Notes: a model not told the origin generated them from the letters alone. A stretch of DNA of 64,000 bases from IMGVR_UViG_3300029922_000001:377499-441498, one strand, 5' to 3'; counted from the stretch's first letter, positions 8,472 to 36,642 are shown. Numbers and translations: made by a program.

Positions 8472-9494
8472 ATGATCAAGTTTTTGGAATATCCGTCAAT
8501 CGAACAATTTCGCTCCGTAATTAAAGATTTTAGTCAGGCTGAATTTATTGGTTTAGATGAAGATGGAAATAAAGTTTATGATCGCACTAAACCTAAGCCA
8601 ATTGTTACTTTTAGAGGGACAGTCAAGCTTCACGGAACCAATAGTTGCGTTGCATATCATAATGGTGAAATTGCAATTCAATCTCGTACACAAAATATTA
8701 CACCAGAGAAAGATAATGCTGGATTTGCTTCATTTGTAATGCAACATAAAGAAGCGTTTTTGAATATTTTTGATCAAATTTTAACAAATCATCCTACGGA
8801 AAAAACGATTTATATGTACGCCGAATGGTGCGGTGGCAACATTCAAAAGGGTGTAGCCATTGCTAACCTTCCTAAATCTTTCTTTATCTTTGATATTTGT
8901 ATTTCTGATACAAATGAAGAAGAGATTACTCGTGAGTGGATTGATATTACTCCATATAGAGATATTGATAATGGTATTTATAATATTTTCGATTATCCTA
9001 ATTGGACTATGGATATTGATTTTAATAACCCAGCTTTAAAACAAAATGATCTAATTGATATTACAATTGGAATCGAAGATGAATGCCCAGTTGGTAAAGC
9101 TTTTGGCTTCTCAGGTACGGGTGAAGGTGCTGTATGGTCAGCAATTCATAATGGAAAGCGTTATATCTTTAAGGTTAAAGGTGAAAAGCACTCAGTAAGT
9201 AAAGTAAAAACCTTAGCTAGTGTAGACGTTGAAAAGCTTAACGGAATTAATGAATTCATTGATTATGCTGTTACCGAAAATCGACTAGATCAAGCTATTG
9301 ATACTGTCTGTAAAAATAGTCTAGATATTCAAAAAATGGGTGATATCATTCGTTGGGTAATGGCAGATGTAATTAAAGAAGAAACCGACACATTAGAATC
9401 TAATGGACTTACTACTAAAGATGTTACTAGTAAAATCGCAGAAAAAGTTCGTAAAATGGTTAGTCTTCGATTGGATAAACAAAGCGGTTTATAA
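8472..9494 (+). CDS. RNA ligase, Rnl2-like (ATP-dependent)
   Basis: Motif I KLHGTN, QSR, YAEWCGGNIQKGV, FFIFDI, GEGAVW, IFKVK. Confidence 0.85.
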   Translation: MIKFLEYPSIEQFRSVIKDFSQAEFIGLDEDGNKVYDRTKPKPIVTFRGTVKLHGTNSCVAYHNGEIAIQSRTQNITPEKDNAGFASFVMQHKEAFLNIFDQILTNHPTEKTIYMYAEWCGGNIQKGVAIANLPKSFFIFDICISDTNEEEITREWIDITPYRDIDNGIYNIFDYPNWTMDIDFNNPALKQNDLIDITIGIEDECPVGKAFGFSGTGEGAVWSAIHNGKRYIFKVKGEKHSVSKVKTLASVDVEKLNGINEFIDYAVTENRLDQAIDTVCKNSLDIQKMGDIIRWVMADVIKEETDTLESNGLTTKDVTSKIAEKVRKMVSLRLDKQSGL

Positions 9495-10641: not shown

Positions 10642-10705
10642 ATCCCCAATAGGAGAATTAGAGGTATACTCTAGACAACACAATCAGGAAAATCTTCAAG
10701 AAAGC

Positions 10706-10734
10706 TTGACAAAAGACTTCAAGATAGGTATAAT
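10706..10734 (+). promoter_or_regulatory. Consensus sigma-70 promoter TTGACA-17-TATAAT upstream of the tmRNA-like RNA
   Basis: TTGACA 10706-10711 and TATAAT 10729-10734, in tandem with a CCCCAA-type promoter at 10641-10670 that has no ATG after it. Confidence 0.85.
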
Positions 10735-10758
10735 GAATGAGTAAGAAAGAAAGCAAGC

Positions 10759-11022
10759 GCCCGATAGCTTGGGTTAACGCAGACTTAACAAGTAGATGTC
10801 TATATTGATTCACTCATTGCGCAATGAGAAGAATAACGGGACACGCTGAATGGAAAATAGATAACTGAGATTAACACAGTTATTTATAAAGAAGACAGTA
10901 GCATAAAGAGAAAGCAAGTGAGGCTTAGAGTACGTAATGTTAATCACCCTCTAAGATAATGAGTAAGTAACGTAGTGGTGTTTGGTGAGTTTGATGTGTA
11001 GGTTCGATGCCTACATCGGGCT
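10759..11022 (+). ncRNA. tmRNA-like / tRNA-like RNA A (264 nt)
   Basis: Acceptor GCCCGAT/ATCGGGC plus U discriminator; T-arm GTAGG-TTCGATG-CCTAC; stemless D-loop AGCTTGGGTTAAC; CAGACTT(10780-86)/GAGTTTG(10987-93) helix; about 200-nt insert. Confidence 0.65.
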
Positions 11023-11026
11023 CGCG

Positions 11027-11722
11027 TTAAATATGTCTATTGTAAATATTTTTAATTAAATTGTTTACAATAGACCAATATTCATCTTTATGAGATTGAG
11101 TTAAGTGTTTGCATTTAGATGAATCTATAGTACAAAATTCTATTCCATTTTCATTACATAAAATAGATTTTTGTTTGTCATTATTTTGAATTTTATTCAA
11201 TTTATCTTGCCCGTAAATTGGTTCATAATGGAAAATACCATTAAGTTCAATAGCTAATTTCAGTGTTGGAAAATAAAAGTCTAATTCTGAATCAATCGCC
11301 TTATGTTTATTGTATTCACAATTCAACTCTGGGTAATGTAATTGTATTTGTTCTTCAAGATAAACCTCTAATTTAGATCGTCTATTGCCATGTGTTTTGT
11401 TTTTATTGTTGTAGGTGGTGGCGCAACTATGATTACAGAAAAATCTTCCAGTATTTGATTTTTTTATTGCTCCTAATCTTACTGTTATTTTTTTACTACA
11501 ACATGAACATTCTTTAGGAACTCTATATTTTATACTTTTTTGTGATGTCATGCACCTTGTAGAACAATAAAGTGGTTGATTTCTTTTAAGAGTTTTATTT
11601 ATTTGAGATTTCTTTCTTATAAAATATAAATTACAAGCATAACAAATTAATTCAATTTGAGGATCACCTTTAAATTGATTTAAATATTCTATTGATATAT
11701 TATTAGATAATGGAGTGTTCAT
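11027..11722 (-). CDS. Free-standing PD-(D/E)XK (Vsr/DUF559-like) endonuclease with Cys-rich Zn-binding N-terminus; probable homing endonuclease
   Basis: CS.RC, CSCC, FCNHSC motifs, then ELDFYFPTLKLAIELNGIFHY; the only long minus-strand gene; sits inside the RNA cluster. Confidence 0.75.
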   Translation of the reverse strand: MNTPLSNNISIEYLNQFKGDPQIELICYACNLYFIRKKSQINKTLKRNQPLYCSTRCMTSQKSIKYRVPKECSCCSKKITVRLGAIKKSNTGRFFCNHSCATTYNNKNKTHGNRRSKLEVYLEEQIQLHYPELNCEYNKHKAIDSELDFYFPTLKLAIELNGIFHYEPIYGQDKLNKIQNNDKQKSILCNENGIEFCTIDSSKCKHLTQSHKDEYWSIVNNLIKNIYNRHI

Positions 11723-11765: not shown

Positions 11766-11794
11766 TTGACAGAGTATGAAAAACGAGGTATAAT
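11766..11794 (+). promoter_or_regulatory. Consensus sigma-70 promoter TTGACA-17-TATAAT driving the second half of the RNA cluster
   Basis: TTGACA 11766-11771, TATAAT 11789-11794; no ORF downstream until 12458. Confidence 0.85.
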
Positions 11795-11985
11795 ACATCC
11801 ATAAGCCAACGAGATAAATATGGTCAAGTTCCGAAATGGGAACCGGAAAGGCTAATTGCATTACCTTCATCGGGTACGAGACGGATATATATACTACGTT
11901 GATGGTAGGATGAAATTTATTTCATGAATTAGGCTGAACTCCTAATGTATATAATAGGAAAGCTGAAATAATCTTTCCTGCGCAC

Positions 11986-12084
11986 GAGAAAGAAAGCTAT
12001 AAGTGGTACATAGAAAGCGCAGAAGTTTCTCTTTAAATTCAATAGAAAAAGAAGAGTGTATAGGTTCGATTCCTATCTTTCTCA
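11986..12084 (+). ncRNA. tRNA-like RNA B (99 nt), non-canonical anticodon region
   Basis: Acceptor GAGAAAG/CTTTCTC+A; D-like arm CTAT-AAGTGGTAC-ATAG; T-arm ATAGG-TTCGATT-CCTAT; about 40-nt A/T-rich middle. Confidence 0.6.
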
Positions 12085-12093
12085 CGAGAAAAT

Positions 12094-12182
12094 GGGCGTT
12101 TGCCGAAGTTGGTTAACGGCAGTTCCACTATGACATAAAGTTGTAGTGGAGCTGATCAGGGGTTCGAGTCCTCTAGCGCCCA
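12094..12182 (+). ncRNA. tRNA-like RNA C (89 nt) with a 13-14-bp anticodon stem and 5-nt loop
   Basis: Acceptor GGGCGTT/AGCGCCC+A; D arm GCCG-AAGTTGGTTAA-CGGC; GTTCCACTATGAC-ATAAA-GTTGTAGTGGAGC; T-arm AGGGG-TTCGAGT-CCTCT. Confidence 0.75.
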
Positions 12183-12252
12183 CTCCGAGTTGTAACGATG
12201 TCGTAAACCTGTTTAAATGGTAACATACTGGAACGATTTAACGGACAATTCC

Positions 12253-12415
12253 GAGAGGGAAGAATATATAAGCAGTTAGTTAATGGTTATAATAGCATAA
12301 AGTAAGCATGAAGCAATTCATGGGTGAAAGCAGTAGTGAGTTAGAGTCTCAATTATATATTTGTTTAGTAAAGTAGAATTTTAATACAGATTAGTTCGAA
12401 CCTACCCTCTCTCCA
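12253..12415 (+). ncRNA. tRNA-like RNA D (163 nt) ending in CCA
   Basis: GAGAGGG/CCCTCTC acceptor-like stem plus T-CCA; short TAG-TTCGAAC-CTA T-loop; internal GAATATATAA/TTATATATTT helix and CATGAA-GCAA-TTCATG hairpin. Confidence 0.5.
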
Positions 12416-12457
12416 TTTAAAATCCCCCAGCAGACATATTTAAGGTATACTATAATC

Positions 12458-25271: not shown

Positions 25272-26324
25272 ATGTTTAATGTAGAAAATCTTGAGAAAAT
25301 GGTTACTGAGGGATATATTCACAAGATTCCTCATGAAAATGGATTATATCATCTATTAAATTATACGCCTTTGGCTGCGTTCAAAAAGGTGTGGAATTTT
25401 GAAACTCTTAATAGTCGTGGTACGGTTATTGATAATGAATACAATATCATTTCAAAACCTATGGAAAAATTTTTTAATGATTTCGAAGTCACTGAAGGTT
25501 TAATTCCTTATCATCTTCCATTTGATGCATTTACAAAATTGGACGGTTCTTGTATCATTGTGAGACGATTAGGTGATGAACTTCTTGTGAACACTCGTGG
25601 CTCATTTAAATCACCGCAATCACAAATGGCTCATTTATTGTTAAAAGAAAAGTATAACATTAATGATTTTGATCCAAATTACACTTATATTTTCGAATAT
25701 ATCGGGTTAGAAAATCGTATTGTGGTGTTATATAAAGAAAGCGATGTTGTTCTTTTAACAATGTATGATATGCGAACATTAGAAGAAGTTGAATATGATC
25801 AATTCCCTAAACATTTCAATATTGTTAAGCGATATGATGGTCTTGATATTGAAACAATGAAATCATTAGACATTCCAAATGAAGAAGGTTTTGTTGTTAG
25901 ATTTTCTAACGGTTTCCGTATGAAACTGAAGATGAAAACTTATATGTCACTTCATGGAATTGTTACAGGATTGAGTTCTAGAAAAGTTTGGGAATTAATG
26001 AAAGATGGAAAATCTCTAGAAGAAATTGCATCTGCTTTACCAGATGAATTTTATGAATTCGCAACTAAAACAAAAACACAACTTCAGGATAAGTTTGATG
26101 CAATTGAAAGCAAGGTGCAGATTGCTCAGATGGGACTTGCGTTCGCAGGTTTAACTGAGCGAAAGGATAAAGCATTGTGGATTCAGGCTAATGCTAAGGA
26201 TGTTGCACCATACATGTATGCATGGCTTGATGGTAAGGATTTCACCGCTGGTATTTGGAAGTCAATCTATCCTCCATATATCAGCCCTTTTGAAGAAAGA
26301 GCTAAGTTAACAGGAGAGAACTAA
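25272..26324 (+). CDS. RNA ligase, T4 Rnl1 (RnlA)-like
   Basis: LNYT...W.....SRG.VID, KP.EKFFN, motif I KLDGS, TRGSF.S.Q, FEY....NRIVV.Y, EEGFVV, RMKLK. Confidence 0.85.
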   Translation: MFNVENLEKMVTEGYIHKIPHENGLYHLLNYTPLAAFKKVWNFETLNSRGTVIDNEYNIISKPMEKFFNDFEVTEGLIPYHLPFDAFTKLDGSCIIVRRLGDELLVNTRGSFKSPQSQMAHLLLKEKYNINDFDPNYTYIFEYIGLENRIVVLYKESDVVLLTMYDMRTLEEVEYDQFPKHFNIVKRYDGLDIETMKSLDIPNEEGFVVRFSNGFRMKLKMKTYMSLHGIVTGLSSRKVWELMKDGKSLEEIASALPDEFYEFATKTKTQLQDKFDAIESKVQIAQMGLAFAGLTERKDKALWIQANAKDVAPYMYAWLDGKDFTAGIWKSIYPPYISPFEERAKLTGEN

Positions 26325-36445: not shown

Positions 36446-36642
36446 TCCCCAATAAAAAAATAACAGGTATACTCTGATCATGAACACACACATTGAAGAT
36501 AAGATTTGGTCAAACGATGATCCAAAGATGAAGAAGGTTTTGACAATGGTTTGGGCTGTTAGTTTGGTGATCGCAATCGCCATTGCTTTGGTTACGCTTA
36601 TTGGTTAATCCCCAACGATTGGATTAAAGGTATACTGCACTT

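What the first reader, a model, noticed from the sequence alone, without database searches (positions are those of the whole stretch)
10759..11022. tmRNA-shaped RNA that lacks the alanine identity elements
Seen: 7-bp acceptor (GCCCGAT/ATCGGGC); canonical T-arm; stemless D-loop (AGCTTGGGTTAAC, similar to the TGGATTCGAC loop of tmRNAs); a helix replacing the anticodon arm (CAGACTT/GAGTTTG, extending irregularly to ACTCATT 10812-18 / AATGAGT 10958-64); short linker to the T-arm. Inside the loop is ATAACT|G at 10861-10867, like the sequence before the resume codon in many tmRNAs, and that frame stays open for 30 codons (EINTVIYKEDSSIKRKQVRLRVRNVNHPLR, stop 10957-59). Established: tmRNAs carry G3:U70 and discriminator A for alanylation and usually end their tag in hydrophobic/Ala residues. 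Here the pair is C3:G70, the discriminator is U, and the tag would be basic. Inference: a repurposed phage tmRNA (different charging or tag, SmpB decoy, or trans-translation inhibitor), driven by two tandem promoters.
Basis: partly seen in the sequence, partly recalled or inferred. Interest (0 to 1): 0.85.

Follow-up and report, generated by a model that had tools for sequence, protein, structure and literature searches.

The report
Long-armed tRNA-like RNA of jumbo phage
A 441-kb peat phage makes an abundant 265-base RNA whose ends fold like the top half of a tRNA and get trimmed and CCA-tailed like a tRNA. It has no anticodon loop, matches no known RNA family including tmRNA, and its job is unknown.

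Summary
Positions 10759-11022 carry a 7-bp acceptor stem, a canonical T arm, a 14-nt D region without a proper stem, C3:G70 and discriminator U. The helix replacing the anticodon arm is longer than described: 14 of 15 positions pair (chance about 2.5e-5).

The RNA is real. Metatranscriptome contigs from four environments cover exactly 10759-11018/11023 and nothing around it. One contig reads CCA after the discriminator, where the DNA reads CGC.

It is not a detectable tmRNA. ARAGORN and Rfam give no hit, although Rfam scores a related phage's tmRNA at 106 bits. G3:U70 and A73 are absent. So are the UCGAC and GGAC motifs shared by three phage tmRNAs. No pseudoknot precedes the proposed resume site. 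The D region instead matches a neighbouring tRNA-like RNA (12094-12183) that also has a 15-bp arm.

Best reading (0.45): a tRNA-derived, non-decoding stable RNA. The tRNA module gives it defined ends and stability, and the 184-nt insert is the working part.

Rivals: a convergent tmRNA analogue or antagonist (0.2), or a pre-tRNA with a 195-nt intervening sequence (0.12).

No homologue was found, so there is no covariation test.

The parts
10642..10670 (+). Copy of the phage's gene-start cassette (ATCCCCAA-N12-AGGTATACT), here not followed by a start codon. Probable phage-type promoter for the RNA.
   Evidence: AGGTATACT occurs 85 times in the window against 0.42 expected. The extended consensus is given, and 66 of 84 copies have ATG exactly 6 nt downstream. 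This copy has AAC there.
10706..10734 (+). Perfect sigma-70 promoter: TTGACA, 17-nt spacer, TATAAT. The predicted start lies about 17 nt before the mature 5' end.
   Evidence: one of only two 12/12 sites in the 64 kb. The other (11766-11794) heads the neighbouring tRNA-like RNA cluster.
10759..10765 (+). Acceptor stem, 5' strand (GCCCGAT). Mature 5' end of the RNA.
   Evidence: RNA contigs of runs X16 and X18 stop matching the genome exactly here. Pair probability 0.42-0.82.
10766..10779 (+). 14-nt D region (AGCTTGGGTTAACG) with GG for the elbow contact but no regular D stem.
   Evidence: ARAGORN draws only 3 pairs and a mismatch. It shares GTTAACG(G)CAG with the tRNA-like RNA at 12094-12183.
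10780..10794 (+). Long arm, 5' strand (CAGACTTAACAAGTA), replacing the anticodon arm.
   Evidence: 14 of 15 positions pair with 10979-10993; chance 2.5e-5. The first 7 pairs have probability about 0.52.
10795..10978 (+). 184-nt AU-rich internal domain. It holds hairpins at 10813-10828 (6 bp, GCGC loop), 10857-10888 (11 bp, 9-nt loop) and 10924-10955 (7 bp).
   Evidence: pair probabilities 0.88, about 1.0 and 0.51. The whole-RNA z-score is only -1.16. Variants seen in RNA runs: 10812 A>G, 10894 G>A, 10946 deletion.
10867..10959 (+). Not established as coding.
   Evidence: My rough estimate from base composition gives about a 7% chance that a given frame stays open this long. The frame starts inside the 11-bp hairpin. 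The 10946 deletion in run X24 changes the end from HPLR to PL.
10979..10993 (+). Long arm, 3' strand (TGTTTGGTGAGTTTG).
10994..11014 (+). 4-nt variable-loop equivalent (ATGT) followed by the T arm GTAGG-TTCGATG-CCTAC.
   Evidence: Pair probability 0.91-0.99.
11015..11022 (+). Acceptor stem, 3' strand (ATCGGGC), and discriminator T. CCA is not encoded (the DNA continues CGC).
   Evidence: The X18 RNA contig reads T-CCA after the stem.
11035..11075 (.). AT-rich perfect inverted repeat just downstream. Possible transcription stop; it overlaps the 3' end of the minus-strand homing-endonuclease-like ORF.
   Evidence: It appears as a hairpin. The consensus scan did not call it a terminator.
12094..12183 (+). 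Sister RNA. It has a tRNA top half with a regular D arm, but a 15-bp perfect helix and a 5-nt loop in place of the anticodon arm. ARAGORN labels it tRNA-Ser(ACT), or tRNA-Tyr with a 14-nt intron.
   Evidence: 33.5 bits; z = -5.5.
11986..12083 (+). Third tRNA-like RNA: 7-bp acceptor, T arm, D arm, long variable region and a 9-nt loop where the anticodon loop should be. ARAGORN misses it.
   Evidence: tRNA-Sec model, 19 bits against a cut-off of 47.

Best explanation
10759-11022 is the gene for a roughly 265-nt stable, non-decoding, tRNA-derived RNA of a 441-kb peat jumbo phage.

Shown:
- It has two promoters, the phage's own gene-start cassette and a perfect sigma-70 site.
- The RNA in environmental samples begins exactly at G1 of the acceptor stem.
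- It ends after the discriminator, and one contig carries a CCA that the DNA does not encode.
- The ends form a tRNA top half: 7-bp acceptor, canonical T arm, GG-containing D region.
- A 15-bp helix replaces the anticodon arm and leads into a 184-nt AU-rich domain.
- A neighbouring gene has the same design.

Inferred:
- The tRNA module is what host RNase P, 3' trimming enzymes and the CCA-adding enzyme act on. This gives the RNA exact ends, protection from exonucleases and hence high abundance. It is the natural counterpart of an engineered 'tRNA scaffold'.
- The inserted domain, or the anticodon-less tRNA body itself, is the effector. It most likely binds and titrates a host or phage tRNA- or RNA-binding factor during infection. 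The partner is unknown.
- It resembles tmRNA in topology but is not a member of that family.
For: - Exact end-to-end RNA contigs in four environments with zero flanking depth, and CCA in X18.
- 19 RNA runs hold the RNA. All words those runs share with the 1.9-kb region come from this gene: the same runs hold 0.09 of 189 sampled words and 0.71 of 24, about 17 words either way.
- Two promoters.
- Arm with 14 of 15 pairs, chance 2.5e-5.
- The design 'tRNA top half plus an arm of at least 11 bp' turned up convincingly only twice in the window plus the fetched phage loci, of which the 80 ligase loci alone total 1.2 Mb. The two cases, this RNA and 12094-12183, lie 1.3 kb apart.
- D region shared with that sister RNA.
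- No 7-nt anticodon loop, and no tRNA or tmRNA hit.
- No tmRNA signature motifs (one search compared).
Against: - No homologue was found anywhere, so no base pair has covariation support.
- The internal domain folds no better than shuffles (z = -1.16), and no target or partner is identified.
- The string before the proposed resume codon resembles a true phage tmRNA.
- ARAGORN in intron mode can read the locus as a tRNA with a 195-nt intron.
- The data are contigs, not reads, so a rarer spliced or aminoacylated form cannot be excluded.
Confidence: 0.45

Rival explanations
1. A convergent or highly diverged tmRNA analogue. The RNA would be charged by a synthetase other than AlaRS. By my recall of the published identity rules (not a tool result), G1:C72, C2:G71 and U73 are closest to bacterial glycine acceptor determinants. 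It would enter stalled ribosomes and either add the 30-residue basic, non-degron tag from GAG 10867, or act as a decoy that blocks host trans-translation.
For: - Topology: tRNA-like domain, long helix, internal domain. The D region is exactly 14 nt, as in the phage tmRNAs.
- GGAAAAUAGAUAACU|GAG against L065's GGAAAAUAUAACU|GCA.
- Position of the proposed resume codon (nt 109 against 92 in L065).
- A 30-codon open frame ending in TAA and followed by further stops.
- CCA-tailed and abundant, like tmRNA.
- Huge phages are known to carry tmRNA and SmpB (PMC7162821).
- A phage molecule consisting only of the tRNA-like domain (mycobacteriophage DS6A) is reported to inhibit tmRNA (PMC4131195, PMC11915505).
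Against: - No tmRNA call by ARAGORN or Rfam at E<=10, against 106 bits for L065.
- No G3:U70 or A73.
- The UCGAC and GGAC motifs are absent (one search compared).
- No pseudoknot upstream of the resume site.
- The resume codon is buried in an 11-bp hairpin.
- The tag end changes in an indel variant.
- No SmpB or synthetase domain among the 25 Pfam families listed (of 32 found) for the window's 114 ORFs.
- The D region is tRNA-type and shared with the sister RNA.
Confidence: 0.2
2. A pre-tRNA interrupted in the anticodon loop by a 195-197-nt intervening sequence that masks the loop in a duplex. Removal, possibly using the phage's own RNA-repair enzymes for the sealing step, would give a decoding tRNA. 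Three solutions exist on paper: ARAGORN's Pro-UGG; Thr-GGU with loop UUGGUGA; and Val-AAC with loop UUAACAA, from a bulge-helix-bulge motif at the canonical 37/38 site.
For: - ARAGORN in intron mode calls tRNA-Pro(tgg) with a 195-nt intron at position 28 here. It calls tRNA-Tyr(gta) with a 14-nt intron at the equivalent site in the sister RNA.
- Read directly from the sequence, the canonical register gives a 4-bp helix (27-30 with 224-227) flanked by two 3-nt bulges, then a 3-bp inner helix. The resulting loop UUAACAA has U33 and A37. My estimate of the chance of this is about 2.5e-4.
- Rnl1-type and Rnl2-type ligases, an RlaP nucleotidyltransferase and a metallophosphoesterase are encoded in the window.
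Against: - No group I intron hit, even at E<=10.
- In that register the continuous helix makes 6 pairs against 4 for the bulged form, so the bulged form is disfavoured.
- The sister RNA's helix has no bulges at all.
- The mature product would lack a proper D stem.
- Position 37/38 of the Pro, Thr and Tyr solutions is atypical for those tRNAs.
- All four RNA contigs are colinear with the DNA and show no deletion joint.
- ARAGORN calls a tRNA for almost any deletion end-points, so its call has little specificity.
- No splicing endonuclease was identified.
Confidence: 0.12
3. The abundant environmental RNA is not (only) the linear phage transcript. It would be a circular or tandem form: a 273-nt unit with the acceptor stem closed by a tetraloop. 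That would point to tandem gene copies in relatives, RNA circularisation, or an independently spreading small RNA element.
For: - The X18 contig runs 10784-11023, then CATTGGGA, then 10759-10789. The junction ATCGGGCTCC-ATTG-GGAGCCCGAT is a perfect 10-bp hairpin.
- The 4 letters before 10759 in the X16 contig also do not match the genome.
- The RNA appears in many RNA runs, while the JGI metagenome-contig scan returned only the source contig and a chance hit, and GTDB genomes returned nothing.
Against: - Seen in one contig of one run.
- The six extra letters are not explained by circularising the mature RNA.
- Peat DNA runs hold the whole 1.9-kb phage region.
- The gene has its own promoters.
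- Template-switching artefacts in library preparation or a tandem duplication would produce the same contig.
Confidence: 0.05

Closest known systems
tmRNA (SsrA), including the canonical tmRNAs of large phages (e.g. locus L065 11355-11745)
   Same: - 7-bp acceptor, T arm, and a 14-nt D region without a stem.
- A long irregular helix in place of the anticodon arm, with a large internal domain.
- 5' end at G1, CCA tail, high abundance.
- An AAAAUA..UAACU string before a possible resume codon.
   Different: - No G3:U70 or A73.
- No UCGAC or GGAC motifs in the tRNA-like domain.
- No pseudoknots.
- The resume site lies in a hairpin.
- The tag would be long and basic, without an ALAA-type end.
- Only about 27 nt lie between the stop codon and the closing helix.
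- Zero score with the Rfam and ARAGORN models.
Mycobacteriophage DS6A mini-tmRNA, which consists of the tRNA-like domain only (PMC4131195, PMC11915505)
   Same: A phage-encoded tRNA-like top half without a normal coding function. It has been proposed to act as a decoy.
   Different: DS6A keeps clear tmRNA homology and is about 65-80 nt. This RNA has no tmRNA homology, a different acceptor identity and a 184-nt insert.
Phage T4 RNAC and RNAD, small stable RNAs of the tRNA gene region (PMC3014915, PMC9697503)
   Same: Stable non-coding RNAs encoded beside phage tRNA genes, next to a homing-endonuclease-type gene. Their function is still unknown.
   Different: No sequence relationship was tested or expected. 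T4 RNAC and RNAD are classed as late RNAs, whereas this RNA also has a perfect host-type promoter.
tRNA-mimic RNAs matured by tRNA enzymes: bacterial YrlA Y RNAs, mascRNA, and engineered tRNA scaffolds
   Same: A tRNA-like module is used for folding, processing and stability, while another part of the molecule does the work.
   Different: In YrlA the acceptor-like stem is closed and the ends lie in the Ro-binding stem; here the ends are the acceptor stem. There is no Rfam hit to any of these families. None of the 25 Pfam families listed (of 32 found) for the window's ORFs is a Ro (TROVE) domain.
Intron-containing tRNA genes: bacterial group I introns in anticodon loops, and archaeal bulge-helix-bulge introns
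   Same: A large insertion at the anticodon loop of a tRNA-shaped gene. A formal ARAGORN intron call and a paper bulge-helix-bulge motif at position 37/38.
   Different: No group I core was detected. The bulged form is weaker than the continuous helix. There is no D stem, and no spliced form appears in the RNA contigs.

Membership tests
tmRNA | Recognised by the family covariance models (Rfam RF00023 and the permuted forms) or by ARAGORN's tmRNA search | tested here: not met
   No hit at the gathering score or at E<=10 on 551 nt. ARAGORN with -m gives nothing, even at -ps80. Positive control: the L065 phage tmRNA scores 106 bits.
tmRNA | Alanine identity: G3:U70 wobble pair and discriminator A73 | tested here: not met
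   C3:G70 and U73, read directly.
tmRNA | Conserved sequences of the tRNA-like domain: ..GG(A/U)U(U/C)CGAC in the D loop, and GGAC immediately 5' of the T stem | tested here: not met
   Both are present in the three phage tmRNAs L065, L066 and L072. The candidate has UUGGGUUAACG and UGAUGU instead.
tmRNA | Pseudoknot PK1 upstream of a single-stranded resume codon | tested here: not met
   Enumerating interleaved stems of at least 4 bp in nt 29-110 gave none. This was a simple search and would miss weak or short knots. The proposed resume codon lies in an 11-bp hairpin with probability about 1.0.
tmRNA | Tag reading frame with a conserved proteolysis-signal C-terminus | tested here: inconclusive
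   A 30-codon frame exists, but it ends in HPLR. A 1-nt deletion variant ends in PL. By my rough estimate the frame length is not beyond chance. There are no homologues to test for coding conservation.
tmRNA | SmpB partner, and aminoacylation with delivery by EF-Tu | not testable with these tools
   No SmpB or synthetase domain among the 25 Pfam families listed (of 32 found) for the 114 + strand ORFs of 75 aa or more in the window. The other 377 kb of the genome and the host were not searched.
tRNA (decoding) | Cloverleaf with a 7-nt anticodon loop, recognised by the tRNA models | tested here: not met
   No RF00005 hit and no ARAGORN call without intron mode. The anticodon arm is replaced by a 15-bp helix, and the D stem is degenerate.
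tRNA gene with a group I intron | Group I catalytic core, U before the 5' splice site and G at the intron's 3' end | tested here: not met
   No Intron_gpI hit at E<=10. None of the three possible intron 3' ends is a G (read).
tRNA gene with a bulge-helix-bulge intron | Two 3-nt bulges separated by a 4-bp helix, placing the cuts so that a 7-nt anticodon loop results | tested here: inconclusive
   The canonical 37/38 register can be drawn and gives the loop UUAACAA. However, all of its pairs are A:U or G:U. The competing continuous helix makes 6 pairs against 4. The sister RNA has no bulges. No spliced contig was seen, and no endonuclease gene was found.

The most novel reading that the evidence does not exclude
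This phage has independently built a tmRNA-like molecule from one of its own tRNA genes. The RNA would be charged with an amino acid other than alanine; the acceptor is closest to glycine identity (U73, G1:C72, C2:G71). It would enter stalled host ribosomes and then either release them with a basic, non-degradative tag or jam the host's trans-translation. That would make it the first natural tmRNA analogue without alanine identity.
Probability: 0.08. Interest if true: 0.9.

Novelty: new variant of a known kind. Interest (0 to 1): 0.6.

Why it matters
Small RNAs that borrow the tRNA shape, such as tmRNA, Y RNAs and mascRNA, are rare, and each one has revealed new biology. This is an unannotated RNA that no standard tool detects, yet it assembles from metatranscriptomes of peat, permafrost, soil, wetland, rhizosphere and a bioreactor.

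It belongs to a set of three anticodon-less tRNA look-alikes driven by the two strongest host-type promoters in 64 kb of a jumbo phage. They sit among RNA-repair genes.

Working out what it binds could show a new way for phages to manipulate the host's tRNA or translation machinery. It could also throw light on the long-unexplained stable RNAs of phage tRNA regions, such as T4 RNAC and RNAD.

It also shows that tRNA and tmRNA finders miss such genes.

Tried and rejected
Homologue searches, all negative:
- blastn against INPHARED phages.
- Exact or degenerate patterns in IMG/VR for the T arm plus acceptor, the D loop, D loop with gap and T loop, and pre-resume string with gap and T loop. These gave only the source contig or chance hits.
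- JGI metagenome contigs: the source contig plus one chance hit.
- GTDB genomes: none, then one chance hit inside a Bordetella coding region.
- nhmmer against 80 loci of phages sharing the neighbouring RNA ligase and against other parts of the same genome.
- The gapped scan failed to return the window's own contig even though the pattern matches it. Gapped scans are therefore not exhaustive.

Relatives through neighbouring genes:
- NUDIX gave one non-syntenic relative at 41% identity.
- The RNA ligase gave 80 loci at 41-56% identity with many tRNAs and three canonical tmRNAs, but no RNA like this one.
- The promoter cassette is essentially unique to this genome in IMG/VR.

Recovering the RNA-derived contigs through spurious ORFs over the gene failed.

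Ideas rejected:
- Group I intron.
- Stop-codon recoding of the genome: the standard code already gives 72% coding on the + strand.
- The global alignment to a phage tmRNA was uninformative.
- A tRNA-like end at about 12253-12415, which has no proper T stem (read).

Full report
**Source and setting.** The window is the last 64 kb of IMGVR_UViG_3300029922_000001 (also Ga0302280_1000004), a 441,498-bp viral contig from a peat metagenome. It has about 33% G+C, and nearly all genes lie on the + strand. It encodes an rIIA-like protein, a RuvB-like ATPase, a NUDIX hydrolase, and Rnl2-type and Rnl1-type RNA ligases. A Pfam scan of all 114 + strand ORFs of 75 aa or more adds an RlaP 'RNA repair' nucleotidyltransferase, a metallophosphoesterase, GNAT acetyltransferases, a radical-SAM protein and an ArdC-like protein. 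None of the 25 families listed (of 32 found) is SmpB or an aminoacyl-tRNA synthetase. The standard genetic code fits: 72% of the + strand lies in ORFs of at least 100 codons.

**The observation.**
- Acceptor GCCCGAT 10759-65 pairs with ATCGGGC 11015-21.
- The discriminator is T at 11022, and no CCA is encoded.
- T arm GTAGG-TTCGATG-CCTAC at 10998-11014, preceded by the 4-nt linker ATGT.
- A 14-nt D region with no regular stem.
- C3:G70.
- ATAACT|GAG at 10861-69, followed by a 30-codon open frame ending at TAA 10957-59.

A scan of the whole window for 'T arm plus 7-bp acceptor' gave only this RNA, the two ARAGORN tRNAs, one further tRNA-like RNA and one weak hit in a coding region.

The helix that replaces the anticodon arm is larger than described. 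Positions 10780-10794 pair with 10979-10993 at 14 of 15 positions. Random draws of the same composition reach this at a frequency of 2.5e-5 at a fixed register. The whole molecule folds no better than shuffles (z = -1.16). What is well defined is the tRNA module, the arm and three hairpins.

**Expression.** Two searches of public runs found the 286-nt stretch in at least 19 metatranscriptomes: permafrost, peat, bioreactor, soil, wetland and rhizosphere, dated 2018-2025. In those runs, all words shared with the surrounding 1.9 kb come from this gene. Peat DNA runs hold the whole 1.9 kb.

Contigs of four RNA runs were laid on 10650-11100.
- Depth is zero up to 10745 and from 11034 onwards.
- One contig covers 10759-11018 and another reaches 11023.
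- Two contigs stop matching the genome exactly at 10759.
- Identity is 95-99%.
- The X18 contig continues after the discriminator with CCA, where the DNA has CGC.

So there is a discrete RNA whose 5' end is G1 of the acceptor stem and whose 3' end is CCA-tailed. That is what RNase P, 3' trimming and the CCA-adding enzyme would produce; the enzymes themselves are inferred, not shown.

Variants seen: 10812 A>G in all four runs, 10894 G>A, and a 1-nt deletion at 10946. The last two lie in unpaired positions of the predicted fold.

**Promoters.** TTGACA-17-TATAAT at 10706-34 is a perfect 12/12 sigma-70 site. The only other one in the 64 kb (11766-94) heads the next RNA cluster. By my estimate from base composition, about 0.06 such sites are expected by chance.

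Upstream, 10642-70 is a full copy of a cassette (ATCCCCAAT..AGGTATACT) that precedes most genes of this phage. The 9-mer occurs 85 times in the window against 0.4 expected. In 66 of 84 copies ATG follows after exactly 6 nt. Here no start codon follows, so the cassette behaves as a promoter rather than a ribosome site.

**Is it a tmRNA?** The tests say it is not a family member.
- ARAGORN finds no tmRNA, even at lowered threshold.
- Rfam gives nothing at gathering scores or at E<=10 on the isolated 551 nt. The same library scores a canonical tmRNA in a related large phage at 106 bits.
- Among 80 loci of phages sharing the neighbouring RNA ligase, three carry canonical tmRNAs with ...ALAA tags. 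All three have UCGAC in the D loop and GGAC just before the T stem. The candidate has neither.
- G3:U70 and A73 are absent.
- No H-type pseudoknot can be drawn upstream of the proposed resume codon.
- That codon lies in an 11-bp hairpin with pair probability about 1.0.
- The 10946 deletion variant changes the tag's C-terminus from HPLR to PL.

- The D region is exactly 14 nt, as in the phage tmRNAs.
- The string GGAAAAUAGAUAACU|GAG is strikingly like L065's GGAAAAUAUAACU|GCA.
- Huge phages do carry tmRNA and SmpB (PMC7162821).
- A phage molecule made only of the tRNA-like domain (DS6A) is reported to inhibit tmRNA (PMC4131195, PMC11915505).

**Is it a tRNA with an intron?** ARAGORN in intron mode calls tRNA-Pro(tgg) with a 195-nt intron after position 27. 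For the neighbouring RNA 12094-12183 it calls tRNA-Tyr(gta) with a 14-nt intron at the equivalent place.

The call is weak. ARAGORN returns a tRNA for almost any pair of deletion end-points. The D stem it draws has three pairs and a mismatch. Positions 37/38 are atypical.

- There is no group I signature, and no possible intron 3' end is a G.
- On paper, a bulge-helix-bulge motif can be drawn at the canonical 37/38 site. It has a 4-bp helix (27-30 with 224-227), bulges at 31-33 and 228-230, and an inner helix 34-36 with 221-223. It would leave the textbook loop UUAACAA with anticodon AAC.
- All those pairs are A:U or G:U. The continuous helix in the same stretch makes six pairs instead of four. 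The sister RNA's helix has no bulges.
- None of the four RNA contigs shows a deletion joint. Contigs can hide minor species, and 70-nt tRNAs are poorly sampled.

**What it most resembles.** The closest relative is its neighbour. 12094-12183, which ARAGORN calls tRNA-Ser(ACT) and Rfam scores at 33.5 bits, has a normal acceptor, D arm and T arm. In place of the anticodon arm it has a perfect 15-bp helix closed by five bases (z = -5.5).

The candidate's D region shares GTTAACG(G)CAG with it, as if the 5' strand of the D stem had been deleted. A descriptor search for 'tRNA top half plus an arm of at least 11 bp at the anticodon-arm register' was run over the window and the phage loci fetched up to that point; the 80 ligase loci alone total 1.2 Mb. 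It found convincingly only these two RNAs. A third tRNA-like RNA (11986-12083) has a 9-nt loop and a long variable region.

So this phage carries a small set of tRNA-derived RNAs that cannot decode.

**Best explanation (confidence 0.45).** This is a tRNA-derived, non-decoding stable RNA. The tRNA top half serves as the handle for host tRNA-maturation enzymes and gives defined ends, a CCA tail and stability. The 184-nt insert, or the anticodon-less tRNA body itself, is the effector, probably by binding or titrating a host or phage factor.

- Shown: the gene, promoters, ends, CCA, architecture and paralogy.
- Inferred: the enzymes, the stabilising role and the mode of action.
- Rivals: a convergent tmRNA analogue or antagonist (0.2); a pre-tRNA with an intervening sequence (0.12); a circular, tandem or independently spreading form (0.05).

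**Unexplained.** The X18 contig joins ...ATCGGGC-T-CCA to TTGGGA and then to GCCCGAT.... This makes a perfect 10-bp hairpin capped by ATTG and a 273-nt unit. The X16 contig also has four non-genomic letters before 10759. Tandem copies in a relative, circular RNA or a library artefact would each explain it. Only raw reads can tell them apart.

**Limits.** No homologue was found in any collection, so no pair is supported by covariation. One gapped scan missed the source contig itself. The single read-laying run used contigs, not reads. Only 64 kb of the 441-kb genome was examined in full, plus a few fragments.

Noticed in passing
window, 85 sites, e.g. 10642-10670, 12423-12451, 36608-36636: A conserved cassette, ATCCCCAAT-A-(5 purine-rich nt)-AA-TT-N-G-AGGTATACT-N5-C-ATG, precedes most genes. 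The 9-mer occurs 85 times against 0.42 expected, 84 of them on the + strand, and 66 of 84 have ATG exactly 6 nt after it. It looks like a phage-specific two-part promoter that would give leaderless or near-leaderless mRNAs, one per gene. In IMG/VR it is essentially confined to this genome.
   Followed up: partly
window 12094-12183: The 'tRNA-Ser(ACT)' called by ARAGORN and Rfam (33.5 bits) has a perfect 15-bp helix with a 5-nt loop instead of an anticodon arm (z = -5.5). It is not a normal decoder and appears to be a sister of the RNA studied here.
   Followed up: partly
window 11986-12083: A further tRNA-like RNA that ARAGORN misses: 7-bp acceptor GAGAAAG/CTTTCTC, good T arm, D arm, 9-nt 'anticodon' loop and a long variable region. 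The best Rfam match is tRNA-Sec at 19 bits, below the cut-off.
   Followed up: partly
window 11766-12457: The second perfect sigma-70 promoter (11766-94) is followed by about 190 nt of non-coding sequence, the two tRNA-like RNAs, and about 240 nt more non-coding sequence before the next gene. This is a probable multi-RNA operon. None of it appears in the RNA runs that hold the 265-nt RNA.
   Followed up: no
window 11027-11722 (- strand): The only sizeable minus-strand ORF in the region matches phage HNH and homing-endonuclease families (phrog_559, phrog_9084). It is a free-standing homing-endonuclease-like gene wedged between the RNA genes, as segB is in the T4 tRNA region (the T4 comparison is from my own knowledge).
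   Followed up: partly
window 8472-9494, 25272-26324 and other ORFs: The window holds an RNA-repair tool kit: Rnl2-type and Rnl1-type RNA ligases, an RlaP 'RNA repair pathway' nucleotidyltransferase and a metallophosphoesterase. Two NUDIX and two GNAT proteins are also present.
   Followed up: partly
window 10759/11023 junction in RNA run X18: One metatranscriptome contig joins the CCA-tailed 3' end through TTGGGA to the 5' end. The result is a 273-nt unit whose acceptor stem is closed into a 10-bp hairpin. Tandem gene copies, circular RNA and artefact remain undecided.
   Followed up: no
L058 3644-3780 (IMGVR_UViG_3300017722_002988, 199 kb): A 133-137-nt tRNA-like RNA with G3:U70, A73 and encoded CCA, a D arm, and an insertion of about 50 nt where the anticodon loop should be. 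Rfam gives no hit; ARAGORN in intron mode calls it tRNA-Val with a 49-nt intron. It could be a miniature alanine-accepting tmRNA-like molecule or an interrupted tRNA.
   Followed up: no
L065 11355-11745; L066 12500-12888; L072 12911-13301: Canonical tmRNAs, one standard and two permuted, with tags ending in ALAA. They lie within a few kb of the Rnl2-type ligase in other large phages, next to big tRNA clusters.
   Followed up: partly
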